This document shows positions 947 through 19,404 of a stretch of DNA of 27,458 nucleotides, in pieces (the first letter of the stretch is position 1; each line of letters opens with the position of its first letter). A model generated the notes under the pieces. It did not search any database. It saw nothing but the letters and a program-made list of their open reading frames with translations, and was not told the DNA's origin. The DNA lies in assembly GCA_002269645.1 (NCBI GenBank), contig NIVC01005061.1, forward strand, positions 1 through 27,458, read 5' to 3'. The position numbers and the translations under genes are program-made. This DNA comes from Macrostomum lignano (lineage: Eukaryota).

Positions 947-951
947 AAAAT

Positions 952-1813: not shown

Positions 1814-1857
1814 AGTAGAAGGCATGAGGGGGCTTCTGGGACAAAATTTTTCACCTC

Positions 1858-2143
1858 CTCCATAATCCACCTAAATCCATCCATATTATCCCTGACAGAA
1901 TCAGAAAAAAAGGGGGGTCGCACTCGCTAACAAAACGTCCTCCATAATCCACCTAAATCCTTCCATATTATCCCTGACAGAATAAGAAAAAAAAGGGGGG
2001 TCGCACCCGCTCACAAAACGTCCTCCATAATCCCATTAAATCCATCCATATTATCCCCGAAAGAATCATGAAAAAGGGGAGGGGCCGCACTTGCTCCGAA
2101 AACTTTAATCCCATTAAATCCATCCATATTATGACTGACAGAA
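1858..2143 (+). repeat. ~83-bp tandem subrepeats inside TIR (3.5 units in B, 2.5 in C)
   Basis: CTCCATAATCC..TAAATCCATCCATATTATCCC..ACAGAAT units start at 1858, 1940 and 2023, followed by a partial unit. Confidence 0.9.
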
Positions 2144-2355
2144 TATGGGAATATGGGTCCACTGATACCTGTTATGCTCACTGACACAGACATAATCCAC
2201 TGACATCCATCCATAGCATCTTCGAAACAATCAGAAAAAAATATGCATTCTTCTCCCCACATTCAATTCGCAACATGAAACCAGATCCCTAAAACTTTAA
2301 ACCCCCTAACCCAGGGTCCTTACCCTTTGAAAAAAAAATTAAATTTTCTCTAAAA

Positions 2356-2972
2356 ATGTTTCCAGTTGTCTCTCCAGGTTCTTATTACAAAGCGCACGAG
2401 CCTAATTACAAGAGTAAGTACCGATGCAAACTAGAATGCAGCGAGTACATGAGAAAATATTGGCCCGACGTTGATATCAATGTCCCTAATATTAATCTAG
2501 CTCTCCAAAGACACTGGTTTCATAAGTATGGAGTAACCTACGTAAAAGATTACGACAGCTACTGTGACGTAGCGAGTTCGAGATGTAGTCAGCGATTAAT
2601 TAATTATTAGTTGTTTATTTATTAGTTATTTATTTATTGGTTAGCTAGTTCAGTTATTAGTAGTGTTGACACGCATGGTACGAGACAAAATGCCGAGTTG
2701 AGGAGAGTACAAAAAACGAGCGCGAGGTAACAATTTAAATTGTCAAGATGTCTATCAAAAAAGTAATAACAACTTGGACTGAAATAAATAAAACTTCAAG
2801 TACATTTTTTTCTAAATAAATTACATTGAATTAATAGCTGGGAAACCTGCAAATTAATCAACTACAATAATTTGAAGTAATAAAAACTCAGATAGAAACT
2901 AAAAATTTAAGATGCTAACGACATCGTCACAGCTACTATAACTTTGCAGAAATAATTAGGCAATTGCGTTAG
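2356..2972 (+). pseudogene. TIR-encoded ~80-aa protein disrupted by solo LTR
   Basis: MFPVVSPGSYY...KDYDSY then LTR. Removing 2563-2936 restores YNFAEIIRQLR*, as in 9666-9905. Confidence 0.8.
2563..2931. mobile_element. Solo LTR, 369 bp
   Basis: TGTGACG...CGTCACA inverted termini, 5-bp TSD GCTAC (2558-2562 and 2932-2936) and internal AATAAA. Absent from both TIRs of C. Confidence 0.9.
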
Positions 2973-2991
2973 GCGTGTGAAAGTACTAACA

Positions 2992-3383
2992 TTTAAAAAT
3001 GGCCCCACTGGTAGCCATTCTAAGCGTTCTCATTGGTTGATAAGATTATACTAAAGAGAGAGTGGAAATGACTTGTTACTAAAAATAACTCAAGACAGAT
3101 ATTGCGATCGTGTCAATTTAAAATTGGCTGGCCCCACTGGTAGCCATTCTAAGCGTTCTCATTGGTTGATAAGATTATACTAAAGAGAGAGTGGAAATGA
3201 CTTGTTACTAAAAATAACTCAAGACTGCTAATACGGTCGTATTTAAAATTGGCTGGCCCCACTGGTAGCCATTCTAAGCGTTCTCATTGGTTGATAAGAT
3301 TATACTAAAGAGAGAGTGGAAATGACTTGTTACTAAAAATAACTCAAGACTGATATTGCGATCGTCTCAATTTAAAATTGGCT
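2992..3383. repeat. Three ~125-129-bp direct repeats with ~104-bp invariant core and short variable linkers
   Basis: GGCCCCACTGG...CTCAAGAC at 3001, 3130 and 3255. Each unit has ATTGG (CCAAT) and TGATAA motifs. Confidence 0.95.
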
Positions 3384-3402
3384 AAGTCATAACCCGTAAC
3401 CG

Positions 3403-4041
3403 TCACTGTCTCCACATCGCCGCATCCGCCTGGTAGCGAACCTCGTCCCGAATGAGCTTCATATTTTCCAGAACGAAGCTAACTGGTACGGCGCAGCGTT
3501 GTAAGGCCGGAAATTCTGTCAATAAGTCGTACACTCTCAACTTCTTGTCCAAAGTCTGCCTCGATACTTGTAGATTAAGCCGTCGAATTATATTCCGAAC
3601 CGACTTTAGTGTACGTTTGAGCCGGTGAATGATGGAGCCGATGTAAAATGACACAATTAATGTGCGCTTATCATAAAAATTCTCATGCTGAAATAATTCC
3701 ACCAGCATGTTCTGTACAGTGGGTAGAACAGTGGGTAGATGACGAAAGTTCAACGCGTGCATACTTTCCTCGATAACTGATAGCTCCCTTGTTGGCGCTT
3801 GAACTTCGACTCCATACGAAGCACGAAGGCGCTGGAAAACAGCAGCTACTCGTGCTTCGTAGGTGGAAATATCGCGTTGGGTTTGTCCTTCCATGCGAGC
3901 CAAATCGTGCTGTATTTCCTCTTCTTTGAAATTTTCAAACAATTGTTGGAGTCCATCTCTCTGCTCTAAAGGTGTTAAATTAATCAAATCGTTCACAAAT
4001 GCGTTAAGTCGAGCGGTTCTAACTGTAATTCTTTCAGCCAT
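3403..4041 (-). CDS. Orphan 212-aa alpha-helical protein of the variable cassette (possible DNA-binding protein)
   Basis: Intact ORF. Collinear motifs are shared with 10455-11078 (LRASY/LRTAY, IG/LG, FPALQRCAV/YPVLQRSAM). Confidence 0.8.
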   Translation of the reverse strand: MAERITVRTARLNAFVNDLINLTPLEQRDGLQQLFENFKEEEIQHDLARMEGQTQRDISTYEARVAAVFQRLRASYGVEVQAPTRELSVIEESMHALNFRHLPTVLPTVQNMLVELFQHENFYDKRTLIVSFYIGSIIHRLKRTLKSVRNIIRRLNLQVSRQTLDKKLRVYDLLTEFPALQRCAVPVSFVLENMKLIRDEVRYQADAAMWRQ

Positions 4042-4708
4042 TGCGTTTTCTAATAGGAATTGAGTGAAGAGGGCTGGCTGGCTTCCGCCTATACTTAAAA
4101 ACCGTCATGTAGGGTTTGAGGTGGTAGTGGTTGCTGCGCCGCGCCAATATTTTGGCAATTGGAAAGGAAAGCCGTCTCCACACTAGGTAGTCTTTCGTGC
4201 TATGAACTGACTGGTTGATTGGGGTTGCCAAAGCGGAAAGGAAAGCATGCGTGGAAGTTGTACATTCGCAAAATCGATTAAAAGGCTACGCTCCTTAAGC
4301 AAATAGCAGTCGATCAACCACATAACCTCTCTCTGCTTCTCAACTTTTCAAATGCAGCTGTTGCGTTCGGCCAGGGCTGAGAATAATAGTTAAACCCTTC
4401 CCGACTCAAACGCCTCTCTCTACTCCCCCCATATCTTCATACCGTAGAGACCAACTAGGCGGGCCACATTCCGAGGCCAAATCGGCGGGCCGAGGCCAAC
4501 TCGGCGGGCCAACTGGCCTCGCAATTTGGCCAATAATCAATATCAATCAAACATACACAGTCCATGCATGCTAATGGCGGCGAAGCGGTTGACTTTTTAT
4601 TTTCTGCTCTTAGCTCTCTGGAGAATGAGAATCTCTCTTGTGCGCAACTCTTTAGGGAATAAAAAACTGTACTTACTCAAATCCACACTTGCTCATGCCC
4701 TTCCCGAT

Positions 4709-5209
4709 TCAAGCGCCCCTTTCTACCCCCAGCTCTTTCAGCAGTCTTCCTAGTACCTTGTGAGGTGCGCACAAAATAAACCCGGCTCCCGTGCGTTCGC
4801 CCTCTCTCCCCGTGCACTCGCCCTCTCTCCCCAAACACCCGCCCTCGGCGTACACCCCCAACCCCAGTTTTGTCTTACTAAAAATAACAGCTTTAACTAG
4901 CTTCCGAGCGATCGACTCCTTCCACCCGCTTGAAGCCCCTATATTGTCTAGTCTCTTAAGCATTTCTTTGTCCCAGCGATTCTTCTCCTCAGGAAAATCT
5001 CTATATTTAACATCGTGCCACATGCAGACAGAGTCTAGCTCGTTCACAGGCTCATGCCCAGGATGTGGATTATTGTTTTTATCTAGCTGTATTTCAAGTG
5101 GATTCAAAGGCCCGCAATATTTATAGCCGGGAAGTGTCCAGCCTTTGTTCGGATGAGGAAGCTTTTCTATCAGTCCATGTGAATCTAACTTACCACCAGA
5201 GCGCTGCAT
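4709..5209 (-). CDS. PLA2X: parvovirus-type phospholipase A2 domain protein
   Basis: WTLPGYKYCGPLN Ca-loop-like motif and VCMWHDVKY catalytic HD motif. Likely start is MQRSGG at 5209. The C-terminus is uncertain. Confidence 0.85.
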   Translation of the reverse strand: MQRSGGKLDSHGLIEKLPHPNKGWTLPGYKYCGPLNPLEIQLDKNNNPHPGHEPVNELDSVCMWHDVKYRDFPEEKNRWDKEMLKRLDNIGASSGWKESIARKLVKAVIFSKTKLGLGVYAEGGCLGREGECTGREGERTGAGFILCAPHKVLGRLLKELGVERGA

Positions 5210-5239
5210 TATTTTATTTAAAATTTTCTTTTTAAATAA

Positions 5240-6277
5240 ATGACAGATCAGAAACTTAAAAAACTCTACTACAGCGACAAAGGATTCTTTGTAGGCAAAA
5301 ATGCCGTTAGTAAACTCATGGAGCTGAGTAAGGAACCAAAAGCTACAGTAGAAAAATGGCTCTCTAAGCAGGCTGTCTTTCAAGTCTATTTCCCACCAGT
5401 AAAATTTGAAAGGCCCCATTTCAGTATTTATAAACCTAATGAAGCGCACCAAGCAGATCTTTTGTTTCTCCCCAATGACTCAGGCTACAAGTATGCTCTT
5501 ACAATTATTGACATTGCTTCCAGATATAAGGAAGCTCGCCCACTCAAGACGAAGAAGTCAGAGGTTGTTGCCAGCGCACTGCAAGATATTTATAAAAACT
5601 CTCCGCTCACATACCCCCAAATCTTTATGACCGACCCGGGTAAGGAATTCATGGGTGTAGTGAAATCCCTTATGGAAAAGAAAAACACAGAGATTCGCTA
5701 TGGCAGAACAAACTTGCACAGAGACCAGGCTTTTGTGGAAAGATTCAATCTAACTCTAGCCAAGAGACTATTCACTAAGCAGACAGCGCAAGAACTCAAA
5801 CTGAGTGCGGGGCAGTACTATACCAAGTGGACAGAAAGACTCCCCACTGTTATAGAGCAACTGAACAATGAAGTCACACGCATGACTGGATTGAAACCAT
5901 CCCATGCAATTAAACAAGACACTGTCGAACTTAAGGCATCTCATAGAACAGACAACAACACGACAACCCCACACAACACACACAACACAAAACACACCTC
6001 GAACTACCCTAAGCTTCCAGGAGTTGAATCACCATACATACTGACAAACTCTGAGTTTCTACGCTTTTTATATCTACCTGGAGAGCTAGAGAATGACACC
6101 AAAAGAAGAGCTACAGATCCATACTTCAGCCTTGATGTGCATAAAATAGACAGACATTTTACCTCCGACTCCGGTGACTATTACTTTTTATCTCAAGCCT
6201 TTAACCCTAAATCCCCCACGCGGTCATTCACTAGAGCTGAACTCCTAGTGATACCAGCTGACACAGAAATTAATTAA
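5240..6277 (+). CDS. int: Retroviral-type DDE integrase (Maverick c-integrase)
   Basis: HQADLLFL, FMTDPGKEF and FVERFN supply the D-D-E triad. RRATDP C-terminal motif. Intact 345 aa. Confidence 0.95.
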   Translation: MTDQKLKKLYYSDKGFFVGKNAVSKLMELSKEPKATVEKWLSKQAVFQVYFPPVKFERPHFSIYKPNEAHQADLLFLPNDSGYKYALTIIDIASRYKEARPLKTKKSEVVASALQDIYKNSPLTYPQIFMTDPGKEFMGVVKSLMEKKNTEIRYGRTNLHRDQAFVERFNLTLAKRLFTKQTAQELKLSAGQYYTKWTERLPTVIEQLNNEVTRMTGLKPSHAIKQDTVELKASHRTDNNTTTPHNTHNTKHTSNYPKLPGVESPYILTNSEFLRFLYLPGELENDTKRRATDPYFSLDVHKIDRHFTSDSGDYYFLSQAFNPKSPTRSFTRAELLVIPADTEIN

Positions 6278-6293
6278 AATAATAAAATATTAA

Positions 6294-6740
6294 ATGACAA
6301 AGATTGAAACTAGAACCCTCAATAAACTCAATAATATCATTGAATCAAAGAAACCAGGTATTATATCAATTAAAGGTGTCAAAGTAAAAATCGATCCCAC
6401 GCAGCAAATAGTTCAGTGTAATGAACAAGGACACAGCATCACAGATGAAAAGTCAGGAGGAATCCTACCATTAGCAGCTCTTATTCCGATCATTGCAGGC
6501 GCTGTAAGTGCCGCAGGTGGTGTAGCTGGAGGTGTAGCAACTGCTGTTAAAGCTGGGAATGATAGAGCCCACCAGCTGGAATTGCAAAAGATTGCAAGAG
6601 ACAAAGGTATAACAATTAAGGCAGGAGAGGGCTGCCCCGATCGTGATGATTGTGAGAATGAAAATTCTATAAGCAAGTCTGACATTGTCAAAGCCATCAT
6701 GACACTGCACAATGCTGGGTTTACAATAATGCGGATGTGA
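6294..6740 (+). CDS. Adenovirus pX-like core/membrane protein
   Basis: SGGILPLAALIPIIAGAVSAAGG resembles adenovirus pX GGFLPALIPIIAAAIG. Intact 148 aa. Confidence 0.7.
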   Translation: MTKIETRTLNKLNNIIESKKPGIISIKGVKVKIDPTQQIVQCNEQGHSITDEKSGGILPLAALIPIIAGAVSAAGGVAGGVATAVKAGNDRAHQLELQKIARDKGITIKAGEGCPDRDDCENENSISKSDIVKAIMTLHNAGFTIMRM

Positions 6741-6821
6741 TGAGGTTTAAAACCCCACTTTATCCAGCTTCATAAACCTAATACTACTTATAGGATGTAG
6801 AAACAGTTCAACTTTTCTATC

Positions 6822-6835
6822 AGGGTGGTCACCCT
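6822..6835. promoter_or_regulatory. AGGGT-N4-ACCCT palindrome 28 bp upstream of polB ATG
   Basis: Same motif at 2313, 9623, 15062 and 25960, always 27-29 bp from an ATG. Confidence 0.5.
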
Positions 6836-8274
6836 CAAAATTTTTTTTATATTTTCGAGAAAAATGCCAAAAGCTAATCCAGCAAGAGATTTAGTCAACA
6901 AATATTTTTCAAAAGGCGTCTCATTTCAAGACAAAAGTAATTCACTAAGAGAAGCATGCAAACAAAAGTTCAACACCGACCCTGGTCACCTGGGAAGCTA
7001 TGAAAAACAGTTGGAAATCATCAATCAATTAGAATCAAACCAGTATGCGCCTATACAAAATCCTGCAAAGGAACACCAAGAGAGGAGTCGCAACTTAGTT
7101 AACAAATATGAAACTCTCACTGGTGAAAAAGCAAAGTACCCACAAAATAAGCAGGAACAAGAGAAATTAGAGCAATTAATCCATTTAAAAGAGTCGGAGC
7201 TTGCCACTGAAGAGATTAATTTTGCACAGACGAAGTTTACAGAACATTACATAGAGTACACAATCCCAATTAACGGCACCAACGGTACCACCGCAAACAT
7301 CTACGACTATAAAGACAGCATCCAATCAGTTGTTGATCACACACTCAAAACACGCAAGACCTTTAAACTACAGATATCATTCAAGATTGCGTTTTATATG
7401 CCTGCAAAACCCACTGAGCATCTCGAGTATTACATGACAACAAAGGCAAAGCCATTCACCCCAACAGACACACTGGATCCTTTCCTTCAAGATGTCAATA
7501 AGAAAATTGAAGCGTTTACATCCAGAGGTTCCGGATGGGTCGTGGGAGGGATTCAAAGAGCGACTGTCAGGGTCATGAAATATGACCCACTTAAAGCCTC
7601 CTCTTATATAGAGCTCCCGCATAAGCTAGCCGGTAAAAAAGCTTGCATAAATGTTAAAAATAAAGACAATTGCTGTGCTCTATGGGCAGTTCTTTCTGCA
7701 CTTTTTAGTGTCCCTTTACCACCCCGAAAGAACCTCAAATTATCAAAATTATTTTAACTACTATCTCATTGAATGCGAAAAGAAGGGAATCAGGTTTGAC
7801 AAAGGAGGCTTGGCAATCTCTCAGATCCCAAAGCTAGAAGAAGTGTTTAATAACAAAATTAGAATCACAGTCTTTGAGTGGAGTGAGAAAACTGAGAAAG
7901 TTCAACCGGTCAGATGTAGCAAAGACGTTTTAGATCCCGAGGGGAAAAGGCGGACTGAAGTGGATCTTCTAGTGATTGGTAATTTACTAGAGGAGGCTCA
8001 CTATGTTTGGATTAAAGATCTTTCAAGACTCATACACAAGCAGTTGAATAATCATCACGAGGCTGTTGCCATCTGCCGCTTGTGCCTTAAGCATTACAGT
8101 GGACCTGAACGCTTTGAAAAACTAGCAGAGCATGAATTATCATGCGAGGATCACCCGACAAACTGCTCTCTTCCTTCAGCTGAAGAGAAGTATCTCCGGT
8201 TTAAGAACTATCACAAGATGGAGAAGCTCCCATTTGTTGTATATGCTGATTTCGAATGCTCAATCGTGCCAGAA

Positions 8275-8340
8275 ACTCAAAAACAAACTCCAACTCAAAA
8301 ACAAACTCCAACTCAAAAACAAACTCAAACTCAAAAACAT
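8275..8340 (+). repeat. 18-bp in-frame repeat (TQKQTP x3) in polB; same at 16511-16575
   Basis: ACTCAAAAACAAACTCCA units. Confidence 0.9.
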
Positions 8341-9210
8341 ATCCCCAATTCAGTAGCATATGCCTTTATTAATACAAAAGGACTTGTTGAGTATAATTAT
8401 TTCTTTGGAGAGCAGTGTGTGGAGCAGTTTATTGCCAGAATGTTAGAGTTGCAAAAATTGATTAGCACCCTTCAACCTGTTCCAATAATGATGACTGAGG
8501 AGGATGAAAGCAATTTCCTATCAGCAACTCATTGCCACATCTGCAGGAAACATTTAACTTGCACTAATATTAAAAACCCCACCGTTAGGGACCACTGCCA
8601 CTTTACTGGGAAATTTAGAGGTGCAGCGCATAACACCTGTAATCTAAAGCTAAAATCGAACATTCATGATCTAACGATATTTTGTCACAACGCAAAGAAC
8701 TATGACATGCATTTAATAGTTGAAAAAATCGGCATGATTCCAGACATACACCTTGATTGCATCGCAGAGAACAAGGAGAAGTTTAAGTGTGTTGATATTA
8801 AACAGGATAATTCGGGTACAGGTAAAATAAGACTGAAGGATTCATATCAATTTCTAGCTGCCAGTCTAGACGAACTAAGCAAGAATCTAAAAGATGAACA
8901 ATGTACATATACAAAGATGTTTGCAAGTAAAATTAACAACACTGATGAATCATTTAAACTCCTGAGAACCAAAGGCTTCTACCCCTATGAAAATATTACT
9001 GGGTATCACGTATTTGAAGAAGGTTTACCACCACAGGAGAAGTTCTTTTCAAAGCTAACAGACTCTGGAATCTCTGACAAAGACTATGAGCACGCGAAGC
9101 ATGTCTATAGTTACTTTAATTGTCAAAACTTCTTCCAGTATCACCTGCTTTACCTCTTCACAGATGTGTTTCTGCTGGCTGATGTGTTTGAAACCTTCAG
9201 ATGCACCTGG

Positions 9211-9216
9211 TACACA
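9211..9216 (+). repeat. Left 6-bp target-site duplication TACACA of copy C
   Basis: Repeated at 26370-26375. Single copy in the uninterrupted polB at 17442-17447. Confidence 0.97.
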
Positions 9217-9903
9217 AGTAGAAGGCATGAGGGGGCTTCTGGGACAAAATTTTTCACCTCCTCCATAATCCACCTAAATCCATCCATATTATCCCTGACA
9301 GAATCAGAAAAAAAGGGGGGTCGCACTCGCTCACAAAACGTCCTCCATAATCCCATTAAATCCATCCATATTATCCCCGACAGAATCATGAAAAAGTGGA
9401 GGGGTCGCACTTGCTCCGAAAACTTCGAACATAATCGTATTAAATCCATCCATATTATCCCTGACAGAATCAGAGCAGGTGTCCACTAACACCTGTTATG
9501 TTCACTGACACTGACATAATCCACTAACATCTTCGAAACAATAAGAAAATAATCTGAATTCTTCTCCCCACATTCAATTTGCAACGTGCTACCAGATCCC
9601 TAAGACTTTAAATTATCAGCGCAGGGTCCTTACCCTTTGAAAAAAAATAATAAATTCTCAATAAAATGTTTCCAGTTGTCTCTCCAGGTTCTTATTATAC
9701 TCAGCCTAATCCATTGTACAAATCCAAGTACCAATGCAAACTAGAATGCAGCGAGTACATGAGAAAATATTGGCCCGATGTTGATATCAATGCCCCTAAT
9801 ATTAATCTAGCTCTTCAAAGACACTGGTTTCATAAGTACGGAGTAACATATGTAAAAGATTACGACAGCTATTATAACTTTGCAGAAATCATTAGACAAT
9901 TGT
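9217..9903 (+). repeat. Left TIR of copy C (~687 bp)
   Basis: Reverse complement of 25697-26369. Confidence 0.95.
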
Positions 9904-9905
9904 AG
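9666..9905 (+). CDS. TIR-encoded 79-aa hypothetical protein
   Basis: Intact ORF with AAAATG start, conserved in all three TIR copies in the window. Confidence 0.65.
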   Translation: MFPVVSPGSYYTQPNPLYKSKYQCKLECSEYMRKYWPDVDINAPNINLALQRHWFHKYGVTYVKDYDSYYNFAEIIRQL

Positions 9906-10256
9906 AATGTCGTTACGATACGCTTTAAGACTTTAAGACTGCAATAATAGATATTTTTACGCATGGTATTTTGCTGTGTGGCGGGTGGGTGATAGCGGAA
10001 TGGGTATGGCAGCTGTTTCTGGTCATAGCGCGAGCGGCGTGTGCAGCATAGAGAAAAAAGCTTTTGCCCAGCTCAACCCTAACTAGCTCAGAAGATCCCT
10101 TGCCTAGCTTCAGAAACGCCCATTTAGTTCCTTGTTTAAACCCCCAGCCTTTTCAACCCCCAGCTCTTTCAGCAGTCTTCCTAGATCTTTCCCAGGCAAC
10201 CCCAATCAACCATTAATAGAAAATACTGGCTATAAGTAGAAAATCTGCGGGTTTCC

Positions 10257-10337
10257 CTTCTAGAATTCGAATTCTAGAAAATTCTAGAACAAAAAGAGAA
10301 TCCGTGGATTCCCGAGCCCACACCAATGGTATATATA
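10257..10337 (+). promoter_or_regulatory. Heat-shock element plus CCAAT and TATA-like box upstream of 10455 ORF
   Basis: aTTCtaGAAaaTTCtaGAAc at 10271-10290 (4 perfect alternating nGAAn units), cTTCtaGAAt at 10257-10266, CCAAT at 10323, TATATATA at 10330-10337. Confidence 0.7.
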
Positions 10338-10454
10338 CAGCCGATTCACACCGCCCCTCGCCTCACCCTGCCTGCCCCGCCTCGCCTCACCCCGCCTCAA
10401 CTCGCTGAGCCAGCAACTTCTTATTTTTGACTAGCTTAATCTCTGGATCTTGCC

Positions 10455-11078
10455 ATGGATGAAGAAATGCAAGCAGGCAACAACGTTTACATCCAAAATC
10501 TGGAGAACTTCATCAAGGCGGTTTTTTCTAGTAAAGATCTCGACAACTGGAATCTTTGGGCCGATAAATACAATGCAATTGCTCGGTCACCAATCGTGAA
10601 GCCAACTATCAATGGACGGCTAGCGAAAACTACCGACAAGCAATTACAAATCGGCAAGGCTCTGGACGAGTTGCGCACGGCCTATAAAACCAACAGTGAG
10701 CCTGTGCCAGTGCATTCTCTAGAAGAATTTATGCAGGGAACATTTACGATCGACGCAGTGCTTGTACAGATTGCCAACCTTCATAAGCTAGTTGAACGGT
10801 ATGGTAAGCATGGCTTTGCAAACGGCCTACAGCTCGGCAGGATCTCTCTGAGAATGGAGCGGGTTCTCAGTAAGGAACAGTTCAACGAGCTGAAAAGACG
10901 TGCACCGTTCACCAGCCAGTGGACCAACTTTCTGATGAAATTGGCTGACCAAGCTGAGAAATATCCGGTGCTACAAAGATCTGCAATGTCCCTGCACAAG
11001 CTGAAGTCGATGATTGCATACTTGCCAGAGGCCCTTGCGATGCTGCAACAGGAAGTGGACGAAGGCTTGTTGTTTTAA
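10455..11078 (+). CDS. Orphan 207-aa alpha-helical protein of the variable cassette, distant homolog of 3403-4041
   Basis: Intact ORF with GCCATGG start context and shared collinear motifs with the B protein. Confidence 0.8.
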   Translation: MDEEMQAGNNVYIQNLENFIKAVFSSKDLDNWNLWADKYNAIARSPIVKPTINGRLAKTTDKQLQIGKALDELRTAYKTNSEPVPVHSLEEFMQGTFTIDAVLVQIANLHKLVERYGKHGFANGLQLGRISLRMERVLSKEQFNELKRRAPFTSQWTNFLMKLADQAEKYPVLQRSAMSLHKLKSMIAYLPEALAMLQQEVDEGLLF

Positions 11079-11164
11079 CTTTTAAATTACCTATCTATTG
11101 TTTATTTAGCAACTCATGAAGCTACAATAATAGCAAGTTATCCTTGGATAGTTACTAATGTTGA

Positions 11165-12165
11165 CACCAACCTCAAATTTTGAAACCACTGGTTTCATTT
11201 TCTGAGGTGGGTGTTTGATTAAAATAGCAAATTTGCTTGAGACAGTGTAGACAAATGTTTCTGCTGGAAGCAGTGCAGAACTCAGATCACCCACCTCAAA
11301 ATTTGAAACCAACGGTTTCATTTTCTGAGGTGGGTGTTTGACTAGGAGAGCGTAGAAGAAAACGGAGGGATCACCCAGAAGGTTGTACCTTGTAGAGTGT
11401 AGACGTAAGTTCTAAAAATAAAACCCATACAATGTGTTGGGAGAGCGTAGAAGAGATCACCCACCTCAAAATTTGAAACCAGTGGTTTCATTTTCTGAGG
11501 TGGCTGTTTGACTAAGCTCGGGAGAGCGTAGAAGAAAACGGAGCGGCTAGTTGTGGAGGCTAGAAAACGAAAGACCCCTCCCGCCCGGCTCAACCCTCAA
11601 CCCTCTGCAATTCTGGAGAGAGAAGGGGGGGGAGAGAGAAGGGGGGGGGGACTTGTGGCGGAATGCGCGGACTGCATGCAGTGAGTGGCAGGGCGGGTGA
11701 GAACTGGATAGCGCAGCAGTGTAGACCCACCTCAAAATTTGAAACCAGTGGTTTCATTTTCTGAGGTGGCTGTTTGACTAAGCTCGGGAGAGCGTAGAGC
11801 TAGTTGCAGAGGCTAGAGAAGCAGTGCAGAACTCAGATCACCCACCTCAAAATTTGAAACCAGCGGTTTCATTTTCTGAGGTGGCGCGGCGCCCCTGTGC
11901 AAAGAGAGCCCAGTGCTCTGGCCCGGACTGCTGGGGAAGGGAAAGGGAGAGGAGCTCAAGGGGAAGGAGATTTCAGTACAACGGGAGACTCAAAATTCCC
12001 AGGCGCCCCTCTACCCCCCAGCGCGAGATCGCTAGTGTTATGTTTGACTACAAATAGAATGAGCTCGGGAGAGCGTAGAGCTAGTTGCGGAGGCTAGAGA
12101 AGCAGTGCAGAACTCAGATCACCCACCTCAAAATTTGAAACCAGCGGTTTCATTTTCTGAGGTGG
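11165..12165. repeat. Array of six ~48-bp imperfect palindromes with mosaic spacers
   Basis: CCACCTCAAAATTTGAAACCnnnGGTTTCATTTTCTGAGGTGG near 11165, 11288, 11458, 11725, 11839 and 12120. Confidence 0.95.
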
Positions 12166-12335
12166 CTGTTTGACTAGGAGAGCGTAGAGCTAGTTGCGAA
12201 GAGAGAGAGGCACCCAGAGGACAGGCTTGGAATGAGAGGCGGTAGGGCAAGACGGGTGAGAGAAGGGCTGGAGAAAAAGCAGGCGCTCACCCAGAAACCT
12301 TTTATATTGTTGCATAGTTTAGACCCTGCACATAC

Positions 12336-12642
12336 GGGGTTATAGCCTAGTGGTTAGGGCGTCGGACTCACTACTTGAATGAAGGTTGAGGGTTCGATTC
12401 CCGATCCCACTGCAACAATCTGTGTCTTTGAGCAAGGCACTTTACTCCGCATTGCTTCAGTTCACCCAGCTGTAAAATGGGTGCCAGCATTAGCTGGGGT
12501 AATTGAGGGTGTGTGTGGCGACCCCCAGTCCTTGGACTGAACAGCCGTACGCAGCCTTAAGATGCGCCGCGCAATAGCTGCGGCTGAGCTGTCGATTGCA
12601 CATCTGCCCATTGGGCAGTTGTAATCAATTATTATTATTATT
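12336..12642 (+). mobile_element. tRNA-derived SINE with CORE-like central domain
   Basis: A-box TAGCCTAGTGG at 12343, B-box GGTTCGATTCC at 12391, TTTGAGCAAGG...CTGTAAAATGG core-like segment and (ATT)n tail. No clear TSD. Confidence 0.85.
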
Positions 12643-12969
12643 TACCTACGATAGGCATTCTGTCTTCTGCTGCATGCTCTGTTGTTGCCACGTTGCTTAC
12701 CACATGAAAAACTATAATAAACTAATAAACTATATAGCGACTATAATCTGTCGCTACAGTCCTTCAGTTGTTTATCAATGTAAACTGTTCAGCAGTCTTT
12801 CTAATTCTTTATTTGGCGTGCGCAATACAAAGGAAAGAAAGGAAAGGAAAGGGAAGCACGCGTGGAACTTGTACATTCGCAAAAGCTGCGCTCCCTCAGC
12901 AAATAGCAGTTACCCCACCCCCTTTCAAAATGCAGCTGTTGCGCTTGGCTGCGAATAATCTTTCCCGAC

Positions 12970-13458
12970 TCAAGCGCCTCTCTCAACCCCCAGCTCTTTC
13001 AGCAGTCTTCCTAATACCTCGTTTGGAGCACACAAAATAAACCCCGCTCCCGAGCACTCCGCACACCCGCCCTCTCTCCCCAAACACCCACCTTCGCCTT
13101 GAACCCCCAAACCCAATCTTGTCTTACTAAAAATAACAGCTTTAACTAGCTTCCGAGCGATCGACTCACGAAATCCGCTTGAAGCCCCTATATTGTCTAG
13201 TCTCTTAAGCATTTCTTTGTCCCAGCGATTCTTCTCCTCAGGAAAATCTCTATATTTAACATCGTGCCACATGCAGACAGAGTCTAGCTCATTCACAGGC
13301 TCATGCCCAGGATTTGGGTTGTTGTTTCCATCCAGCTGTATTTCAAGAGGATTCAAAGGCCCGCAATATTTATAGCCGGGAAGTGTCCAGCCTTTGTTTG
13401 GATGAGGAAGCTTTTCTATCAGTCCATGTGAATCTATTTTACCACCAGAGCGTTGCAT
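12970..13458 (-). CDS. PLA2X phospholipase A2 domain protein (copy C)
   Basis: Same YCGP and HDVKY motifs as in B. Likely start is MQRSGG at 13458. Confidence 0.85.
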   Translation of the reverse strand: MQRSGGKIDSHGLIEKLPHPNKGWTLPGYKYCGPLNPLEIQLDGNNNPNPGHEPVNELDSVCMWHDVKYRDFPEEKNRWDKEMLKRLDNIGASSGFRESIARKLVKAVIFSKTRLGLGVQGEGGCLGREGGCAECSGAGFILCAPNEVLGRLLKELGVERGA

Positions 13459-13488
13459 TATTTTATTTAAAATTTTCTTTTTAAATAA

Positions 13489-14517
13489 ATGACAGATCAG
13501 AAACTTAAAAAACTCTACTACAGCGACAAAGGATTCTTTGTAGGCAAAAATGCCGTTAGTAAACTCATGGAGCTGAGTAAAGAGCCAAAAGCTACAGTAG
13601 AAAAATGGCTCTCTAAGCAGGCTGTCTTTCAAGTCTATTTCCCACCAGTAAAATTTGAAAGGCCCCATTTCAGTATTTATAAACCTAATGAAGCGCACCA
13701 AGCAGATCTTTTGTTTCTCCCCAACGACTCAGGCTACAAGTATGCTCTTACAATTATTGACATTGCTTCCAGATATAAGGAAGCTCGCCCACTCAAGACG
13801 AAGAAGTCAGAGGTTGTTGCCAGCGCACTGCAAGATATTTATAAAAACTCTCCGCTCACATACCCCCAAATCTTTATGACCGACCCGGGTAAGGAATTCA
13901 TGGGTGTAGTGAAATCCCTTATGGAAAAGAAAAACACAGAGATTCGCTATGGCAGAACAAACTTGCACAGAGACCAGGCTTTTGTGGAAAGATTCAATCT
14001 AACTCTAGCCAAGAGACTATTCACTAAGCAGACAGCGCAAGAACTCAAACTGAGTGCGGGGCAGTACTATACCAAGTGGACAGAAAGACTCCCCACTGTT
14101 ATAGAGCAACTGAACAATGAAGTCACACGCATGACTGGATTGAAACCATCCCATGCAATTAAACAAGACACTGTCGAACTTAAGGCATCTCATAGAACAG
14201 ACAACAACACGACAACCCCACACAACACAAAACACACCTCGAACTACCCTAAGCTTCCAGGAGTTGAATCACCATACATACTGACAAACTCTGAGTTTCT
14301 ACGCTTTTTATATCTACCTGGAGAGCTAGAGAAAGACACCAAAAGAAGAGCTACAGATCCATACTTCAGCCTTGATGTGCATAAAATAGACAGACATTTT
14401 ACCTCCGACTCCGGTGACTATTACTTTTTATCTCAAGCCTTTAACCCTAAATCCCCCACGCGGTCATTCACTAGAGCTGAACTCCTAGTGATACCAGCTG
14501 ACACAGAAATTAATTAA
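13489..14517 (+). CDS. int: DDE integrase (copy C), intact 342 aa
   Basis: Near-identical to 5240-6277; lacks one HNT repeat and has N>K near the C-terminus. Confidence 0.95.
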   Translation: MTDQKLKKLYYSDKGFFVGKNAVSKLMELSKEPKATVEKWLSKQAVFQVYFPPVKFERPHFSIYKPNEAHQADLLFLPNDSGYKYALTIIDIASRYKEARPLKTKKSEVVASALQDIYKNSPLTYPQIFMTDPGKEFMGVVKSLMEKKNTEIRYGRTNLHRDQAFVERFNLTLAKRLFTKQTAQELKLSAGQYYTKWTERLPTVIEQLNNEVTRMTGLKPSHAIKQDTVELKASHRTDNNTTTPHNTKHTSNYPKLPGVESPYILTNSEFLRFLYLPGELEKDTKRRATDPYFSLDVHKIDRHFTSDSGDYYFLSQAFNPKSPTRSFTRAELLVIPADTEIN

Positions 14518-14533
14518 AATATTAAAATAAAAA

Positions 14534-14980
14534 ATGACAAAGATTGAAACTAGAACCATCAATAAACTCAATAAAATCATTGAATCAAAGAAACCAGGTA
14601 TTATATCAATTAAAGGTGTCAAAGTAAAAATCGATCCCACGCAGCAAATAGTTCAGTGTAATGAACAAAGACACAGCATCACAGATGAAAAGTCAGGAGG
14701 AATCCTACCATTAGCAGCTCTTATTCCGATCATTGCAGGCGCTGTAAGTGCCGCAGGTGGTGTAGCTGGAGGTGTAGCAACTGCTGTTAAAGCTGGGAAT
14801 GATAGAGCCCACCAGCTGGAATTGCAAAAGATTGCAAGAGACAAAGGTATAACAATTAAGGCAGGAGAGGGCTGCCCCGATCGTGATGATTGTGAGCATG
14901 AAAATTCTGTAAGCAAGTCTGACATTGTCAAAGCCATCATGACACTGCACAATGCTGGGTTTACAATAATGCGGATGTGA
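14534..14980 (+). CDS. pX-like protein (copy C)
   Basis: Near-identical to 6294-6740. Confidence 0.7.
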   Translation: MTKIETRTINKLNKIIESKKPGIISIKGVKVKIDPTQQIVQCNEQRHSITDEKSGGILPLAALIPIIAGAVSAAGGVAGGVATAVKAGNDRAHQLELQKIARDKGITIKAGEGCPDRDDCEHENSVSKSDIVKAIMTLHNAGFTIMRM

Positions 14981-15103
14981 TGAGGTTTAAAACCCCACTT
15001 TATCCAGCTTCATAAACCTAATACTACTTATAGGATGTAGAAACAGTTCAACTTTTCTATCAGGGTGGTCACCCTCAAAATTTTTTTTATATTTTCGAGA
15101 AAA

Positions 15104-18100
15104 ATGCCAAAAGCTAATCCAGCAAGAGATTTAGTCAACAAATATTTTTCAAAAGGCGTCTCATTTCAAGACAAAAGTAATTCACTAAGAGAAGCATGCA
15201 AACAAAAGTTCAACACCGACCCTGGTCACCTGGGAAGCTATGAAAAACAGTTGGAAATCATCAATCAATTAGAATCAAACCAGTATGCGCCTATAAAAAA
15301 TTCTGCAAAGGAACACCAAGAGAGGAGTCGCAACTTAGTTAACAAATATGAAACTCTCACTGGTGAAAAAGCAAAGTACCCACAAAATAAGCAGGAACAA
15401 GAGAAATTAGAGCAATTAATCCATTTAAAAGAGTCGGAGCTTGCCACTGAAGAGATTAATTTTGCACAGACGAAGTTTACAGAACATTACATAGAGTACA
15501 CAATCCCAATTAACGGCACCAACGGTACCACCGCAAACATCTACGACTATAAAGACAGCATCCAATCAGTTGTTGATCACACACTCAAAACACGCAAGAC
15601 CTTTAAACTACAGATATCATTCAAGATTGCGTTTTATATGCCTGCAAAACCCACTGAGCATCTCGAGTATTACATGACAACAAAGGCAAAGCCATTCACC
15701 CCAACAGACACACTGGATCCTTTCCTTCAAGATGTCAATAAGAAAATTGAAGCGTTTACATCCAGAGGTTCCGGATGGGTCGTGGGAGGGATTCAAAGAG
15801 CGACTGTCATGGTCATGAAATATGACCCACTTAAAGCCTCCTCTTATATAGAGCTCCCGCATAAGCTAGCCGGTAAAAAAGCTTGCATAAATGTTAAAAA
15901 TAAAGACAATTGCTGTGCTCTATGGGCAGTTCTTTCTGCACTTTTTAGTGTCCCTCACCACCCCGAAAGAACCTCAAATTATCAAAATTATTTCAACTAC
16001 TATCTCATTGAATGCGAAAAGAAGGGAATCAGGTTTGACAAAGGAGGCTTGGCATCTCTCAGATCCCAAAGCTAGAAGAAGTGTTTAATAACAAAATTAG
16101 AATCACAGTCTTTGAGTGGAGTGAAAAACTGAGAAAGTTCAACCGGTCAGATGTAGCAAAGACGTTTTAGATCCGAGGGGAAAAGGCGGACTGAAGTGGA
16201 TCTTCTAGTGATTGGTAATTTACTAGAGGAGGCTCACTATGTTTGGATTAAAGATCTTTCAAGACTCATTCACAAGCAGTTGAATAATCATCACGAGGCT
16301 GTTGCCATCTGCCGCTTGTGCCTTAAGCATTACAGTGGACCTGAACGCTTTGAAAAACTAGCAGAGCATGAATTATCATGCGAGGATCACCCGACAAACT
16401 GCTCTCTTCCTTCAGCTGAAGAGAAGTATCTCCGGTTTAAGAACTATCACAAGATGGAGAAGCTCCCATTTGTTGTATATGCTGATTTCGAATGCTCAAT
16501 CGTGCCAGAAACTCAAAAACAAACTCCAACTCAAAAACAAACTCCAACTCAAAAACAAACTCAAACTCAAAAACATGTCCCCAATTCAGTAGCATATGCC
16601 TTTATTAATACAAAAGGACTTGTTGAGTATAATTATTTCTTTGGAGAGCAGTGTGTGGAGCAGTTTATTGCCAGAATGTTAGAGTTGCAAAAATGATTAG
16701 CACCCTTCAACCTGTTCCAATAATGATGACTGAGGAGGATGAAAGCAATTTCCTATCAGCAACTCATTGCCACATCTGCAGGAAACATTTAACTTGCACT
16801 AATATTAAAAACCCCACCGTTAGGGACCACTGCCACTATACTGGGAAATTTAGAGGTGCAGCGCATAACACCTGTAATCTAAAGCTAAAATCGAACATTC
16901 ATGATCTAACGATATTTTGTCACAACGCAAAGAACTATGACATGCATTTAATAGTTGAAAAAATCGGCATGATTCCAGACATACACCTTGATTGCATCGC
17001 AGAGAACAAGGAGAAGTTTAAGTGTGTTGATATTAAACAGGATAATTCGGGTAAGGTAAAATAAGACTGAAGGATTCATATCAATTTCTAGCTGCCAGTC
17101 TAGACGAACTAAGCAAGAATCTAAAAGATGAACAATGTACATATACAAAGATGTTTGCAAGTAAAATTAACAACACTGATGAATCATTTAAACTCCTGAG
17201 AACCAAAGGCTTCTACCCCTATGAAAATATTACTGGGTATCACGTATTTGAAGAAGGTTTACCACCACAAGAAGTTCTTTTCAAAGCTAACAGACTCTGG
17301 AATCTCTGACAAAGACTATGAGCACGCGAAGCATGTCTATAATTACTTTAATTGTCAAAACTTCTTCCAGTATCACCTGCTTTACCTCTACACAGATGTG
17401 TTTCTGCTGGCCGATGTGTTTGAAACCTTCAGATCACCTGGTACACAGCATATGGCCTCGATCCAGCACATTATGTGTCTCTGCCTGCCACTAGCTGGGA
17501 ATCTTTGCTTAAAATGAAATGGGATCAAGATCCAGATTGGTACATTGAACTTCTTACAGACATTGACATGTACAATTTTGTCGAATCGTCAAAGCGAGGG
17601 GGAATCTCAATTTGCACAGGTATGCAAAAGCAAACAATCCCTACATTGAATCTTACAATAAGGAGCAGCCCTCAAACTACATTACTTACTTGGACGCTAA
17701 TAATCTCTACGGGTGGGCGATGAGTCAAGATCTTCCAGTTAGAGATTTTCGATGGCTACCCTCATCAGAATTCAAACGGGACTTTTCATTGGCTGCCATT
17801 TATGAGGTTGATGTTTACATTCCACCAGAGCTTCACGACTATTTCTCTGACTTTCCACCCTTCCCAGAGAACATCAAGTGCCCGAAAATAATCGAAACTC
17901 CCAATGATAATAATGGAACTTGGCACCTGTCAGGAACAGAAAAAGAACATACAGAGAAACTAACACAGAATCTAAACAACAAGACACGTTACAAAATCCA
18001 TTACAAACTGCTTCAGTATTTTATCTCACTTGGTTGCAGGGTCACCAAAGTTCACGGGCTCTTACATTTACAGAGGAAGCGTGGATGAAACCCTACATTG

Positions 18101-18970
18101 ATAAGAACACCCAGTTTAGGACCAAAGCAACCAACGACTTTGACAAGAACCTCTTTAAGTTGGCCAACAACTCTGTCTATGGCAAGACTCTTGAGAATGA
18201 GCGGAAAAGAACAAACCTGAAACTTGTTACCTCATCAGAGCCTGATGTTATTCAGGCAAATATGTCAAAGCCAACATTCAAAGAACTCCATATCTTTAAT
18301 AGCTACTTAGGTGTGATCATATTTTACAAAACCAAGGTGACGCTGCGCAAGCCGATCTATACAGGTGTCACTGTTCTCGACGAATCAAAACGTCTGATGT
18401 ACCAGTTCTTCTATGGCATGAAGCAGCAGTACAAGGATAAAATGAAACTCTTGTACACTGACACAGACAGTTTTATTATGGACATTCAAACAGAAGACAT
18501 TTATCAGGACATGCTGCAGCAAAAAGATTTGTTTGACTTGTCTGAGTATGATGAATCTTTCAGGACACAGAATGGCGATCAAGTGTTTGACGCCACTAAC
18601 AAGAAAGTGATTGGGAAAATGAAGGACGAGATTGCTGGTGACATAATCACTGAATTCATTGGGTTGAGAGCAAAGTCCTATTTTATAAAATGTGAGTCGT
18701 CAGACCCAATAAAAAATCAAAGGGAATTCCGAAACGTGTGTTAGGAAGGAAATTAATGAAGCTGAATACAGAGACGCCTTGAATTGCAACAAAAAGACAT
18801 CACATGAGTTCTCAAAGCTACAATCTAAAAACCATATTATTCACACAATTCAGCAAAAGAAGATTGGACTGTCAGGTGCAGATAACAAGAGATTCATTTT
18901 TGATGACAATATCAACAGTCTACCGTTCGGGCATTGGAGGTTAGGTTTAGGAGGTGGATATTGGGTTTAG
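15104..18970 (+). pseudogene. polB: Full-length protein-primed PolB with many 1-bp frameshifts
   Basis: Fragments carry YADFE, YLDANNLYGWAM, KLANNSVYGK and YTDTDS motifs in order. Confidence 0.95.
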
Positions 18971-19003
18971 GTTTGAGAGAAAGTTTAATAAACCTCATAA
19001 AAA

Positions 19004-19404
19004 ATGACAACAAATAACTTTCTTGAAGATTTGGCTAACGAACTGGAAATCCCAAACTTTAGAGGAATATTTATGAGGGACACTCTGCCTGATTTTCCTC
19101 TAAGAAAAGAATGCGGCATCATGAACTTTGACACCACCGATAAGCCAGGATCTCATTGGGTTTGCTGGGTGATTGATCCCATCGCAAGCACAAGTGTTAT
19201 TACTTCGATAGCTATGGGACGGCAGTACCAGAAGAGCTAAGAAATTATATGAAGGGAAAAAATAATAAAAAAATTTATCGCTCAGACTTTATTCTCCAAG
19301 GTCTTAGCAGTGATATTTGCGGTGAGCTGTGCATGACTGTTTTGTATGCAATGACCAAAACACGAAAGACCTACAAGGAAATTATTCTTGGCTGTGTTTC
19401 ATAG
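19004..19404 (+). pseudogene. Adenain-like cysteine protease (frameshift near 19190)
   Basis: GSHWVCW, then in the shifted frame YYFDSYG and Q...DICGELC: H/D/Q/C catalytic set. Confidence 0.9.

What the first reader, a model, noticed from the sequence alone, without database searches (positions are those of the whole stretch)
10257..10337. Perfect heat-shock element driving the cassette gene: a stress-induction switch?
A four-unit canonical HSE (TTCtaGAAaaTTCtaGAA) plus an adjacent two-unit one lies about 40 bp upstream of TATATATA and about 165 bp before the ATG. It is flanked by a GAATCC-gt-GGATTC dyad (10298-10311) and GGGTTTCCC (kB-like). This is the HSF1 target layout of hsp70 promoters. 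It suggests heat or proteotoxic stress could trigger a regulator of the provirus, like prophage induction.
Basis: partly seen in the sequence, partly recalled or inferred. Interest (0 to 1): 0.76.

Follow-up and report, generated by a model that had tools for sequence, protein, structure and literature searches.

The report
Heat-shock promoter on a Maverick accessory gene
A textbook heat-shock-factor binding site really does sit in front of a small gene of unknown function at the left end of an integrated, partly decayed Maverick/adintovirus-like element. That gene is therefore probably heat-inducible, but nothing shows that it switches the provirus on.

Summary
Bases 10258-10289 hold three TTCTAGAA palindromes: a two-unit HSE and a perfect four-unit HSE (10272-10289). 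They lie 40 bp before TATATATA (10330-10337), with CCAAT at 10323, and 165 bp before the ATG of an intact 207-aa ORF (10455-11078). A perfect four-unit HSE arises anywhere in the window in only 25 of 2000 shuffles. The kB-like site and the GAATCC dyad are at chance level.

The ORF is the terminal "cassette" gene of a 17.2-kb Maverick/Polinton element of the adintovirus type (9217-26369; 690-bp TIRs, 6-bp TSD). This element is nested inside the polB gene of a second copy.

The protein is all-helical with a basic C-terminal domain. It has four real relatives among 1.8 billion proteins and no informative Pfam, PDB or Foldseek match.

No HSE lies upstream in the paralogous cassette of the outer copy or in five loci carrying the four external homologues. 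Half of the HSE is an exact 10-bp tandem duplication, so it looks recent and allele-specific.

Best reading: an HSF-responsive promoter, as in ONSEN, Helitron1_CE and Macrostomum LTR elements, here on a Maverick accessory gene. A "regulator" that induces the provirus as in prophage induction is unsupported, and the copy's replication and capsid genes are fragmented.

The parts
10258..10289 (.). HSE block: three TTCTAGAA palindromes (TTCTAGAA-TTCGAA-TTCTAGAA-AA-TTCTAGAA)
   Evidence: 10258-10279 is a perfect 22-bp palindrome
10258..10265 (.). two-unit HSE, 14 bp out of register with the four-unit array
10272..10289 (.). perfect four-unit HSE (nTTCnnGAAnnTTCnnGAAn). It is also, from 10270, an exact 2x tandem 10-mer AATTCTAGAA
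   Evidence: (25/2000 shuffles)
10323..10327 (+). CCAAT box directly upstream of the TATA box
10330..10337 (+). TATA box TATATATA, 40 bp downstream of the HSE
10338..10454 (+). predicted start region and C-rich leader. The transcription start is inferred near 10360. No ATG lies between there and the start codon; start context is gccATGg
   Evidence: read; the only upstream ATG ORF (10326) starts before the TATA box; start site is inferred, not shown
10455..11078 (+). intact 207-aa ORF ('cassette' gene): all-alpha, no Cys, basic conserved C-terminal domain (pI 9.7)
10195..10212 (+). 18-bp motif GGCAACCCCAATCAACCA, shared 18/18 with the promoter of the outer copy's cassette gene (4212-4229, opposite strand)
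10249..10257 (.). GGGTTTCCC, the kB-like site of the finding; at chance level
10298..10311 (.). GAATCC-gt-GGATTC dyad; real, but not in HSE phasing and not statistically notable
   Evidence: inference
11159..12212 (+). array of six hairpin-bearing repeats downstream of the ORF
9217..26369 (+). inner Maverick/adintovirus-like provirus (17,153 bp) carrying the HSE gene, inserted in the polB gene of an outer copy and flanked by the 6-bp duplication TACACA
9217..9903 (+). left terminal inverted repeat of the inner element
   Evidence: 94% to 25697-26370
25697..26369 (-). right terminal inverted repeat of the inner element
12970..13701 (-). PLA2-domain virion protein gene of the inner element (the outer copy's gene is 4709-5452)
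13489..14517 (+). rve integrase of the inner element, open (342 aa)
15065..19240 (+). protein-primed polB region of the inner element; broken (several frameshifts and/or stops; limits approximate)
3403..4041 (-). 212-aa cassette ORF of the outer copy: a distant homologue at the same locus, in opposite orientation, with no HSE upstream

Best explanation
The 32-bp block at 10258-10289 is the upstream activating element of an RNA polymerase II promoter of the heat-shock type. This promoter drives the leftmost, hypervariable accessory gene of an integrated Maverick/Polinton element of the adintovirus kind.

Inferred mechanism: under heat or proteotoxic stress, host HSF trimerises and binds the four contiguous inverted nGAAn units, possibly with the neighbouring two-unit site. 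It then activates transcription from the CCAAT/TATA core promoter 40 bp downstream. The resulting mRNA has a short leader free of upstream ATGs and encodes a 207-aa helical protein with a basic C-terminal domain.

This is the same strategy by which ONSEN, Helitron1_CE and some Macrostomum LTR retrotransposons couple their transcription to the host heat-shock response. The HSE appears to be a recent, allele-specific gain made partly by a 10-bp tandem duplication within a promoter whose flanks are shared with another cassette type.

Shown: the sequence anatomy, its improbability by chance, the element context and the small protein family. Inferred: HSF binding, heat induction and the start site. 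Unknown: what the protein does.
For: - Perfect four-unit HSE, unique in the window and found in 25/2000 shuffles. Three of the four TTCTAGAA octamers cluster here.
- Correct geometry: CCAAT at 10323, TATA at 10330 and ATG at 10455, with no upstream ATG after the TATA box.
- The ORF is intact and aligns end to end with a 212-aa homologue (45% identity, E 1.4e-47).
- Element context: TIRs and a 6-bp TSD; rve, PLA2, Adeno_PX and DNA_pol_B_2.
- Promoter flanks are shared with the outer copy's cassette promoter (18/18 motif, collinear to the TATA box), while the HSE block itself differs.
- Precedents in which HSEs in mobile-element promoters give direct heat induction: bioRxiv 10.1101/2024.12.18.629116 and PMC6927752.
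Against: - There are no expression or binding data.
- Only one copy of this allele was available, so conservation of the HSE among close relatives is untested.
- No HSE (three units, up to 1 mismatch) lies upstream in the paralogous outer cassette or in five loci carrying the four external homologues.
- Half of the array is an exact tandem 10-mer, which replication slippage can make without selection.
- The host element is decayed and may be silenced.
Confidence: 0.55

Rival explanations
1. Non-functional by-product. A pre-existing TTCTAGAA palindrome was multiplied by slippage (a 10-bp tandem duplication plus a palindromic duplication) in a decaying, probably silenced provirus. It looks like an HSE because any tandem copy of TTCnnGAAnn is one, but it is neither bound nor used.
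For: 10270-10289 is an exact 2x 10-mer. 10258-10279 is a perfect palindrome. Two-unit TTCnnGAA seeds are common, 16 in the window. No upstream HSE is seen in the paralogue or the homologues. The element has broken polB and fragmented right-arm genes.
Against: Three copies of the ideal unit lie exactly where an upstream activating element belongs, 40 bp before CCAAT/TATA of an intact ORF. The probability of a perfect four-unit HSE anywhere in the window is about 1%, before conditioning on position. Perfect arrays of three or more units in accessible promoters are generally bound by HSF (established knowledge of HSF1).
Confidence: 0.25
2. The HSE-driven protein is a regulator that activates the rest of the provirus, so heat stress induces the element as SOS induces a prophage.
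For: - The gene sits at the genome end next to the TIR, as an immediate-early gene would (analogy only).
- The conserved C-terminal 90 aa are basic (pI 9.7 and 10.5).
- Sub-threshold HTH hints: HTH_Tnp_Tc3_2_like at E 8e-4, below the cut-off, in the outer paralogue; a SopB DNA-binding domain at Foldseek probability 0.21.
Against: - No significant match to any DNA-binding or regulatory family.
- No shared motif linking this promoter to other promoters of the element was looked for or found.
- This copy's polB is broken several times and its right-arm genes exist only as short ORFs, so it could not complete a cycle on its own.
- The HSE is absent from the other cassette type.
Confidence: 0.08
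3. Captured host module. The 207-aa gene and its heat-shock promoter are a host stress gene picked up as cargo by the Maverick. The HSE would then reflect the host gene's regulation, not an adaptation of the element.
For: The cassette is richer in G+C (0.477) than the backbone (0.40). The module is bracketed by a 37-bp direct repeat. A family member in Macrostomum lignano is not inside a recognisable Maverick.
Against: - The family has only four real relatives among 1.84 billion representatives and no cellular annotation.
- The M. lignano copy lies beside PriCT-2/D5_N virus-like ORFs and other transposons.
- The outer copy carries a distant homologue at the same locus with a homologous promoter flank, which argues that this is a resident, fast-evolving element gene.
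- The homologues' upstream regions lack HSEs.
Confidence: 0.1

Closest known systems
Cellular heat-shock promoters (hsp70 / small-hsp type: HSE array, CCAAT, TATA)
   Same: Contiguous inverted nGAAn units in 5-bp phase, placed tens of bp upstream of a CCAAT box and a TATA box, followed by a short leader. The layout matches what is established for HSF1 targets.
   Different: The gene driven is not a chaperone but an orphan helical protein of a virus-like element. Binding and induction are not shown. The array is partly an exact tandem duplication.
HSE-bearing mobile elements: ONSEN (Ty1/copia, Brassicaceae), Helitron1_CE (C. elegans), Mag/CsRN1/Gmr1 Ty3/gypsy lineages of Macrostomum lignano
   Same: A mobile element carries canonical HSEs just upstream of its own TATA box and start site. 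In those cases this gives direct HSF-dependent heat induction (10.1101/2024.12.18.629116; PMC6927752).
   Different: Here the element is a Maverick/Polinton (a virus-like DNA element). In two full-text searches I found no paper reporting an HSE in this class. The HSE drives only a terminal accessory gene, not the integrase/polB or a genome-length transcript. Only one copy is known, and no expression data exist.
Adintoviruses / Mavericks, Alpha (Mayetiola-class) module (Starrett et al. 2021, PMC8502044)
   Same: TIRs, 6-bp TSD, rve integrase, protein-primed PolB, a PLA2-domain virion protein and an adenovirus pX-like protein.
   Different: The 207-aa protein is not one of the described accessory classes. 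It has no Cys, so no LXCXE/CXXC 'Oncoid' motifs, and no Bcl2, IAP or gasdermin match. Capsid genes were not recognised by Pfam, and the ATPase hit is sub-threshold.
Prophage induction switches (lambda cI/SOS) and left-end immediate-early genes of adenoviruses (E1A)
   Same: Conceptual only: a stress-sensing or first-expressed gene at the genome end that could gate the rest of the programme.
   Different: There is no homology and no evidence of regulatory activity. The sensing would be done by a host transcription factor at a promoter, not by repressor cleavage.

Membership tests
Canonical heat-shock element (HSF binding site) | At least three contiguous inverted nGAAn units in 5-bp register | tested here: met
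   Four perfect units at 10272-10289 plus a two-unit site at 10258-10265; 25/2000 shuffles
Canonical heat-shock element (HSF binding site) | Position in a promoter, within about 50-300 bp upstream of the start site | tested here: met
   40 bp upstream of the TATA box and 165 bp upstream of the ATG; the start site itself is inferred
Canonical heat-shock element (HSF binding site) | Occupancy by HSF and heat-dependent transcription | not testable with these tools
   No expression or ChIP data for the source organism are available
Canonical heat-shock element (HSF binding site) | Conservation in related promoters | tested here: not met
   No HSE (three units, up to 1 mismatch) upstream of the outer paralogue or in L004, L005, L006, L007 or L008. 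These are distant (15-47% protein identity); close alleles were unavailable
HSE-bearing heat-activated mobile elements (ONSEN, Helitron1_CE, M. lignano LTR-RTs) | HSE lies in the element's own promoter, not in flanking host DNA | tested here: met
   The block lies 355 bp inside the left TIR of the element 9217-26369
HSE-bearing heat-activated mobile elements (ONSEN, Helitron1_CE, M. lignano LTR-RTs) | HSE drives the transcript that encodes the mobility machinery | tested here: not met
   It precedes only the 207-aa accessory ORF. Integrase starts 3.2 kb and polB 4.8 kb further on, beyond a minus-strand gene
HSE-bearing heat-activated mobile elements (ONSEN, Helitron1_CE, M. lignano LTR-RTs) | HSE shared by the copies of a lineage | tested here: inconclusive
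   One copy of this cassette type is in the window. The protein and the 32-nt block are absent from the protein collection, IMG/VR and JGI metagenomes
Maverick/Polinton, adintovirus-like | Long terminal inverted repeats and a 6-bp target-site duplication | tested here: met
   9217-9903 versus 25697-26369 at 94%; TACACA on both flanks, single in the uninterrupted copy
Maverick/Polinton, adintovirus-like | [quoted passage not shown] | tested here: met
   PF00665 E 2.2e-8; PF03175 E 1.6e-6. polB is broken in the inner copy
Maverick/Polinton, adintovirus-like | Virion module (double jelly-roll capsid, penton, A32-like ATPase, adenain) | tested here: inconclusive
   Only a sub-threshold Pox_A32 hit (E 0.002). 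PLA2 and Adeno_PX are above threshold. Capsid and protease were not recognised by Pfam, and these ORFs are short
NF-kB site | Match to GGGRNWYYCC | tested here: not met
   Only one-mismatch matches; 39 such in the window against 41.5 expected
Transcriptional regulator / HTH DNA-binding protein (for the 207-aa product) | Significant sequence or fold match to a DNA-binding domain | tested here: not met
   Pfam: nothing at or above cut-off. PDB profile search best E 0.38. Foldseek best E 0.25-1.5
Adintovirus 'Oncoid' accessory proteins | LXCXE and paired CXXC motifs | tested here: not met
   The protein has no cysteine

The most novel reading that the evidence does not exclude
The left-end gene of this Maverick lineage is a fast-evolving, possibly DNA-binding early gene whose promoter keeps a common frame (18-bp CCAAT-containing motif ... 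TATA) but swaps its upstream activating element between cassette types. The HSE allele would then be a stress-sensing entry point that couples an animal virus-like element to the host heat-shock response. That would be the first such switch described for Mavericks/adintoviruses, and the first example of alternative 'sensor' alleles in one element family.
Probability: 0.1. Interest if true: 0.75.

Novelty: new member of a known kind. Interest (0 to 1): 0.42.

Why it matters
Direct hijacking of the heat-shock response by mobile elements has been validated in only three groups: ONSEN in crucifers, Helitron1_CE in Caenorhabditis, and a few Ty3/gypsy lineages in Macrostomum. A canonical HSE promoter inside a Maverick/adintovirus-like element would extend the principle to virus-like DNA elements of animals, whose transcriptional control is essentially unknown. 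It would also give a concrete, measurable handle (one gene, one motif) for asking when such endogenous elements are expressed. As it stands it is a well-formed prediction from a single copy, not a demonstrated switch.

Tried and rejected
- **kB-like site:** at chance level. The GAATCC dyad is real but out of HSE phase and unremarkable.
- **Bacterial promoter/terminator scan:** irrelevant to this region.
- **Rfam:** no RNA family in the window.
- **Vector or polylinker artefact:** the block consists of XbaI/EcoRI/BstBI sites, so this was considered. It was rejected because there is no plasmid match, the flanks run continuously into the element, and the gene has natural homologues.
- **Word-indexed protein search:** nothing for the single protein. 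The alignment query returned only P0126, which was already in the query.
- **Exact-protein look-ups of four window proteins:** none is on record, so the source genome is not in the collection and the host could not be named.
- **IMG/VR and JGI metagenome scans** for the protein, the integrase and the 32-nt block: nothing.
- **Integrase relatives:** those at 58-68% identity sit on contigs of 2 kb or less. Those at about 48% (for example L001) have a different gene order, so they cannot test cassette conservation.
- **P0124 and P0125** (2890 and 4467 aa): repeat-driven spurious hits.
- **Function prediction:** PHROGs, Pfam, PDB sequence search and three Foldseek searches on two AlphaFold models (pLDDT 81 and 79) gave no significant match.
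- **Single-strand folding of the block:** only a modest z-score of -2.0, no more than its palindromes would give.

Full report
**1. The observation.**
Reading 9900-11300 confirms every coordinate in the finding.
- TTCTAGAA at 10258-10265 is a two-unit HSE.
- TTCTAGAAAATTCTAGAA at 10272-10289 is a perfect four-unit HSE.
- GAATCCGTGGATTC lies at 10298-10311, GGGTTTCCC at 10249-10257 and TATATATA at 10330-10337.
- The ATG of a 207-aa ORF is at 10455. The HSE ends 40 bp before the TATA box and 165 bp before the ATG.

The four-unit pattern is the only hit in the window even with one mismatch allowed. Perfect three-unit hits occur only here. In 2000 dinucleotide-preserving shuffles of the window, 25 contained a perfect four-unit HSE anywhere. 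The chance of one landing just upstream of a TATA box and an intact ORF is much smaller still. Three of the four TTCTAGAA octamers in 27.5 kb lie within these 32 bp.

- a CCAAT box at 10323-10327 abutting the TATA box;
- that 10258-10279 is a perfect 22-bp palindrome;
- that 10270-10289 is an exact two-copy tandem repeat of AATTCTAGAA.

The kB-like site is not significant. It matches GGGRNWYYCC only with one mismatch, and such matches are as frequent as chance predicts (39 against 41.5). The dyad is real but not in HSE phase.

**2. The surroundings.**
The window consists of nested copies of a Maverick/Polinton element of the adintovirus type. Self-comparison shows the following:
- 4701-9216 equals 12962-17447 at 97.9%.
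- 17442-18523 equals 26370-27458.
- 9216-9903 is the inverted complement of 25697-26370 at 94%.

The junctions show an element beginning AGTAGAAGG at 9217 and ending with its complement at 26369. It is flanked on both sides by TACACA, which occurs once at the equivalent place in the uninterrupted copy. So a 17,153-bp element with TIRs of about 690 bp and a 6-bp target duplication is inserted in the polB gene of an outer copy. The outer copy's left TIR starts at 1814.

Pfam finds a parvovirus-type PLA2 domain, rve integrase, adenovirus pX-like protein and DNA_pol_B_2. This set matches the Alpha-class adintovirus module described in PMC8502044. An A32-like ATPase is only a sub-threshold hit.

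The inner copy is decayed:
- Over the part of polB that is one open frame in the outer copy, the inner copy changes frame at least three times.
- The rest of polB is also in pieces in both copies.
- No ORF in the right arm exceeds 176 aa.
- Integrase (342 aa), the pX-like gene (148 aa), the PLA2 gene and the 207-aa ORF are open.

**3. The gene behind the HSE.**
The HSE lies 355 bp inside the left TIR, in a 3.1-kb 'cassette' (9904-12961) between the TIR and the conserved backbone. The cassette contains the promoter, the 207-aa ORF and a downstream array of hairpin-bearing repeats (11159-12212). It is richer in G+C than the backbone (0.477 against 0.40).

The outer copy has a different cassette (2562-4700). 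Its 212-aa ORF lies on the opposite strand (3403-4041) and is followed by its own tandem repeats. The two ORFs are distant homologues:
- BLASTP gives E 0.003.
- A profile comparison gives E 2.4e-5 over 144 columns, probability 75%.
- Lengths are similar, and the C-terminal helix patterns of two AlphaFold models are alike (pLDDT 81 and 79).

Their promoters share an exact 18-bp motif, GGCAACCCCAATCAACCA. They can be aligned collinearly down to the TATA region, yet the outer promoter has no HSE at the corresponding place. With two sequences and modest identity outside the 18-mer, that collinearity is suggestive, not proven.

**4. The protein family.**
An exhaustive phmmer search of 1.84 billion representatives found four real relatives:
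- P0121: 212 aa, 45% identity, E 1.4e-47, aligned end to end.
- P0122: 180 aa.
- P0123: 104 aa, from Macrostomum lignano assembly GCA_002269645.1 (organism confirmed through).
- P0126: 144 aa.

Two giant repetitive proteins in the hit list are spurious.

The conserved part is the C-terminal 90 or so residues, which are basic (pI 9.7 and 10.5). Nothing identifies a function:
- Pfam gives nothing at threshold. The best hit is HTH_Tnp_Tc3_2_like at E 8e-4, below the cut-off, and only in the outer paralogue.
- The PDB profile search gives a best E of 0.38.
- Foldseek against PDB and BFVD gives a best E of 0.25-1.5.
- PHROGs gives nothing.

The protein has no cysteine, so it is not an adintovirus 'Oncoid'. 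The M. lignano copy lies 1.1 kb from PriCT-2/D5_N ORF fragments, between a Ty3/gypsy element and a Helitron. The family therefore seems to travel with virus-like elements rather than being a host gene.

**5. Conservation of the HSE.**
No site with three units and up to one mismatch lies upstream of the outer paralogue, or of the homologues on L004 (402 bp upstream available), L005 (709 bp), L006 (641 bp), L007 (800 bp scanned) or L008.

L008 does have a perfect three-unit HSE exactly at the stop codon of its gene, followed by a TATA-like tandem repeat. It occurs in 5 of 200 shuffles. After testing several loci this is only a weak lead.

Close alleles of the HSE cassette could not be found. The protein and the 32-nt block are absent from the protein collection, IMG/VR and the JGI metagenomes. 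The HSE is therefore not an ancestral feature of the gene family. Together with the exact 10-bp tandem duplication, this points to a recent gain.

**6. How it most likely works.**
I commit to an HSF-responsive promoter, with confidence 0.55. Four contiguous perfect units suffice for cooperative HSF trimer binding (established knowledge of HSF1). The geometry of HSE, CCAAT, TATA, leader and ATG is that of cellular heat-shock promoters. Three unrelated groups of mobile elements are known to have acquired HSEs that give direct heat induction: ONSEN, Helitron1_CE and six Macrostomum Ty3/gypsy lineages. In the last case, an isolated LTR promoter was reported to drive a reporter on heat shock.

For the element, the benefit would be expression when the host is stressed and silencing is relaxed, or in tissues with constitutive HSF activity. 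Which of these applies is inference.

The main rival is a slippage product without function in a silenced relic (0.25).

**7. Comparison and novelty.**
The cis-element itself is textbook, and HSE-bearing transposons are a known kind. Two full-text searches found no paper linking adintoviruses, Mavericks or Polintons with heat-shock elements. This would therefore be a new member of that kind, in a new class of element.

It differs in that only a hypervariable terminal accessory gene is driven, not the mobility genes. It fails the 'conserved across the lineage' and 'drives the machinery' criteria as far as they can be tested, and it rests on a single copy without expression data. Interest is moderate at 0.42.

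One step was referred: the direct functional test of whether the protein activates the provirus.

Noticed in passing
window 9217-26369, junctions at 9216/9217 and 26369/26370: A complete-length Maverick is inserted in the polB gene of another copy, with the 6-bp duplication TACACA. A third partial copy (1-1559, similar to 20463-23586) precedes the outer copy's left TIR (1814). These elements therefore appear to have inserted repeatedly into one another.
   Followed up: partly
window 2562-4700 versus 9904-12961: The module of promoter, small gene and downstream tandem repeats lies in opposite orientation in the two copies. It encodes only distantly related proteins, although the backbones are 97.9% identical. 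This is a hypervariable, invertible-looking cargo locus between the left TIR and the PLA2 gene.
   Followed up: partly
window 10147-10183, 12976-13013 (and 4717-4753 in the outer copy): A 37-bp piece of the backbone's first gene end is duplicated in direct orientation on both sides of the inner module (about 95% identity). It may be a footprint of the recombination that installed or inverted the module.
   Followed up: no
window 11159-12212; 3000-3383; L008 804-896: Each cassette-family gene is followed by its own tandem repeat array: six units with a long hairpin core in the inner copy, three 127-nt units in the outer copy, and 31-nt units in L008. Their function is unknown.
   Followed up: no
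L008 783-795: In a 27% G+C metagenomic contig carrying homologue P0126, a perfect three-unit HSE GAATTTTCTAGAA starts at the gene's stop codon and is followed by a TATA-like repeat (5 of 200 shuffles). The 104-aa ORF just upstream looks like the N-terminal half of the same gene, which seems to be split in that contig.
   Followed up: partly
L001 12986-13003: A perfect four-unit HSE TTCCAGAACATTCTCGAA lies about 100 bp beyond the 3' end of a Ty3/gypsy pol gene on an ENA contig that also carries a distant Maverick relative. It is possibly an LTR-borne HSE like those reported in Macrostomum.
   Followed up: no
L007 10001-12377 (Macrostomum lignano NIVC01002974.1): The flatworm homologue P0123 (C-terminal domain only) lies 1.1 kb upstream of PriCT-2 and D5_N ORF fragments, between a Ty3/gypsy element and a Helitron. 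The family may be shared among different virus-like elements.
   Followed up: partly
window 1853-2245, 9256-9483, 26108-26330: The TIRs contain internal tandem repeats of about 83 bp. This accounts for part of their imperfect (94%) arm-to-arm identity.
   Followed up: no
window 8256-8357 and 16492-16593: An 18-bp tandem repeat inside the polB reading frame encodes a TQKQTP-like peptide repeat in both copies. A sub-threshold Endonuclease VII-like hit lies just after it.
   Followed up: no
window 521-1467 and 22430-23494, minus strand: Minus-strand ORFs with glutamine/proline-rich (QPQ) stretches are built on GTT/GTG-type DNA repeats. They are conserved between the third partial copy and the inner copy and have no Pfam match.
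   Followed up: no
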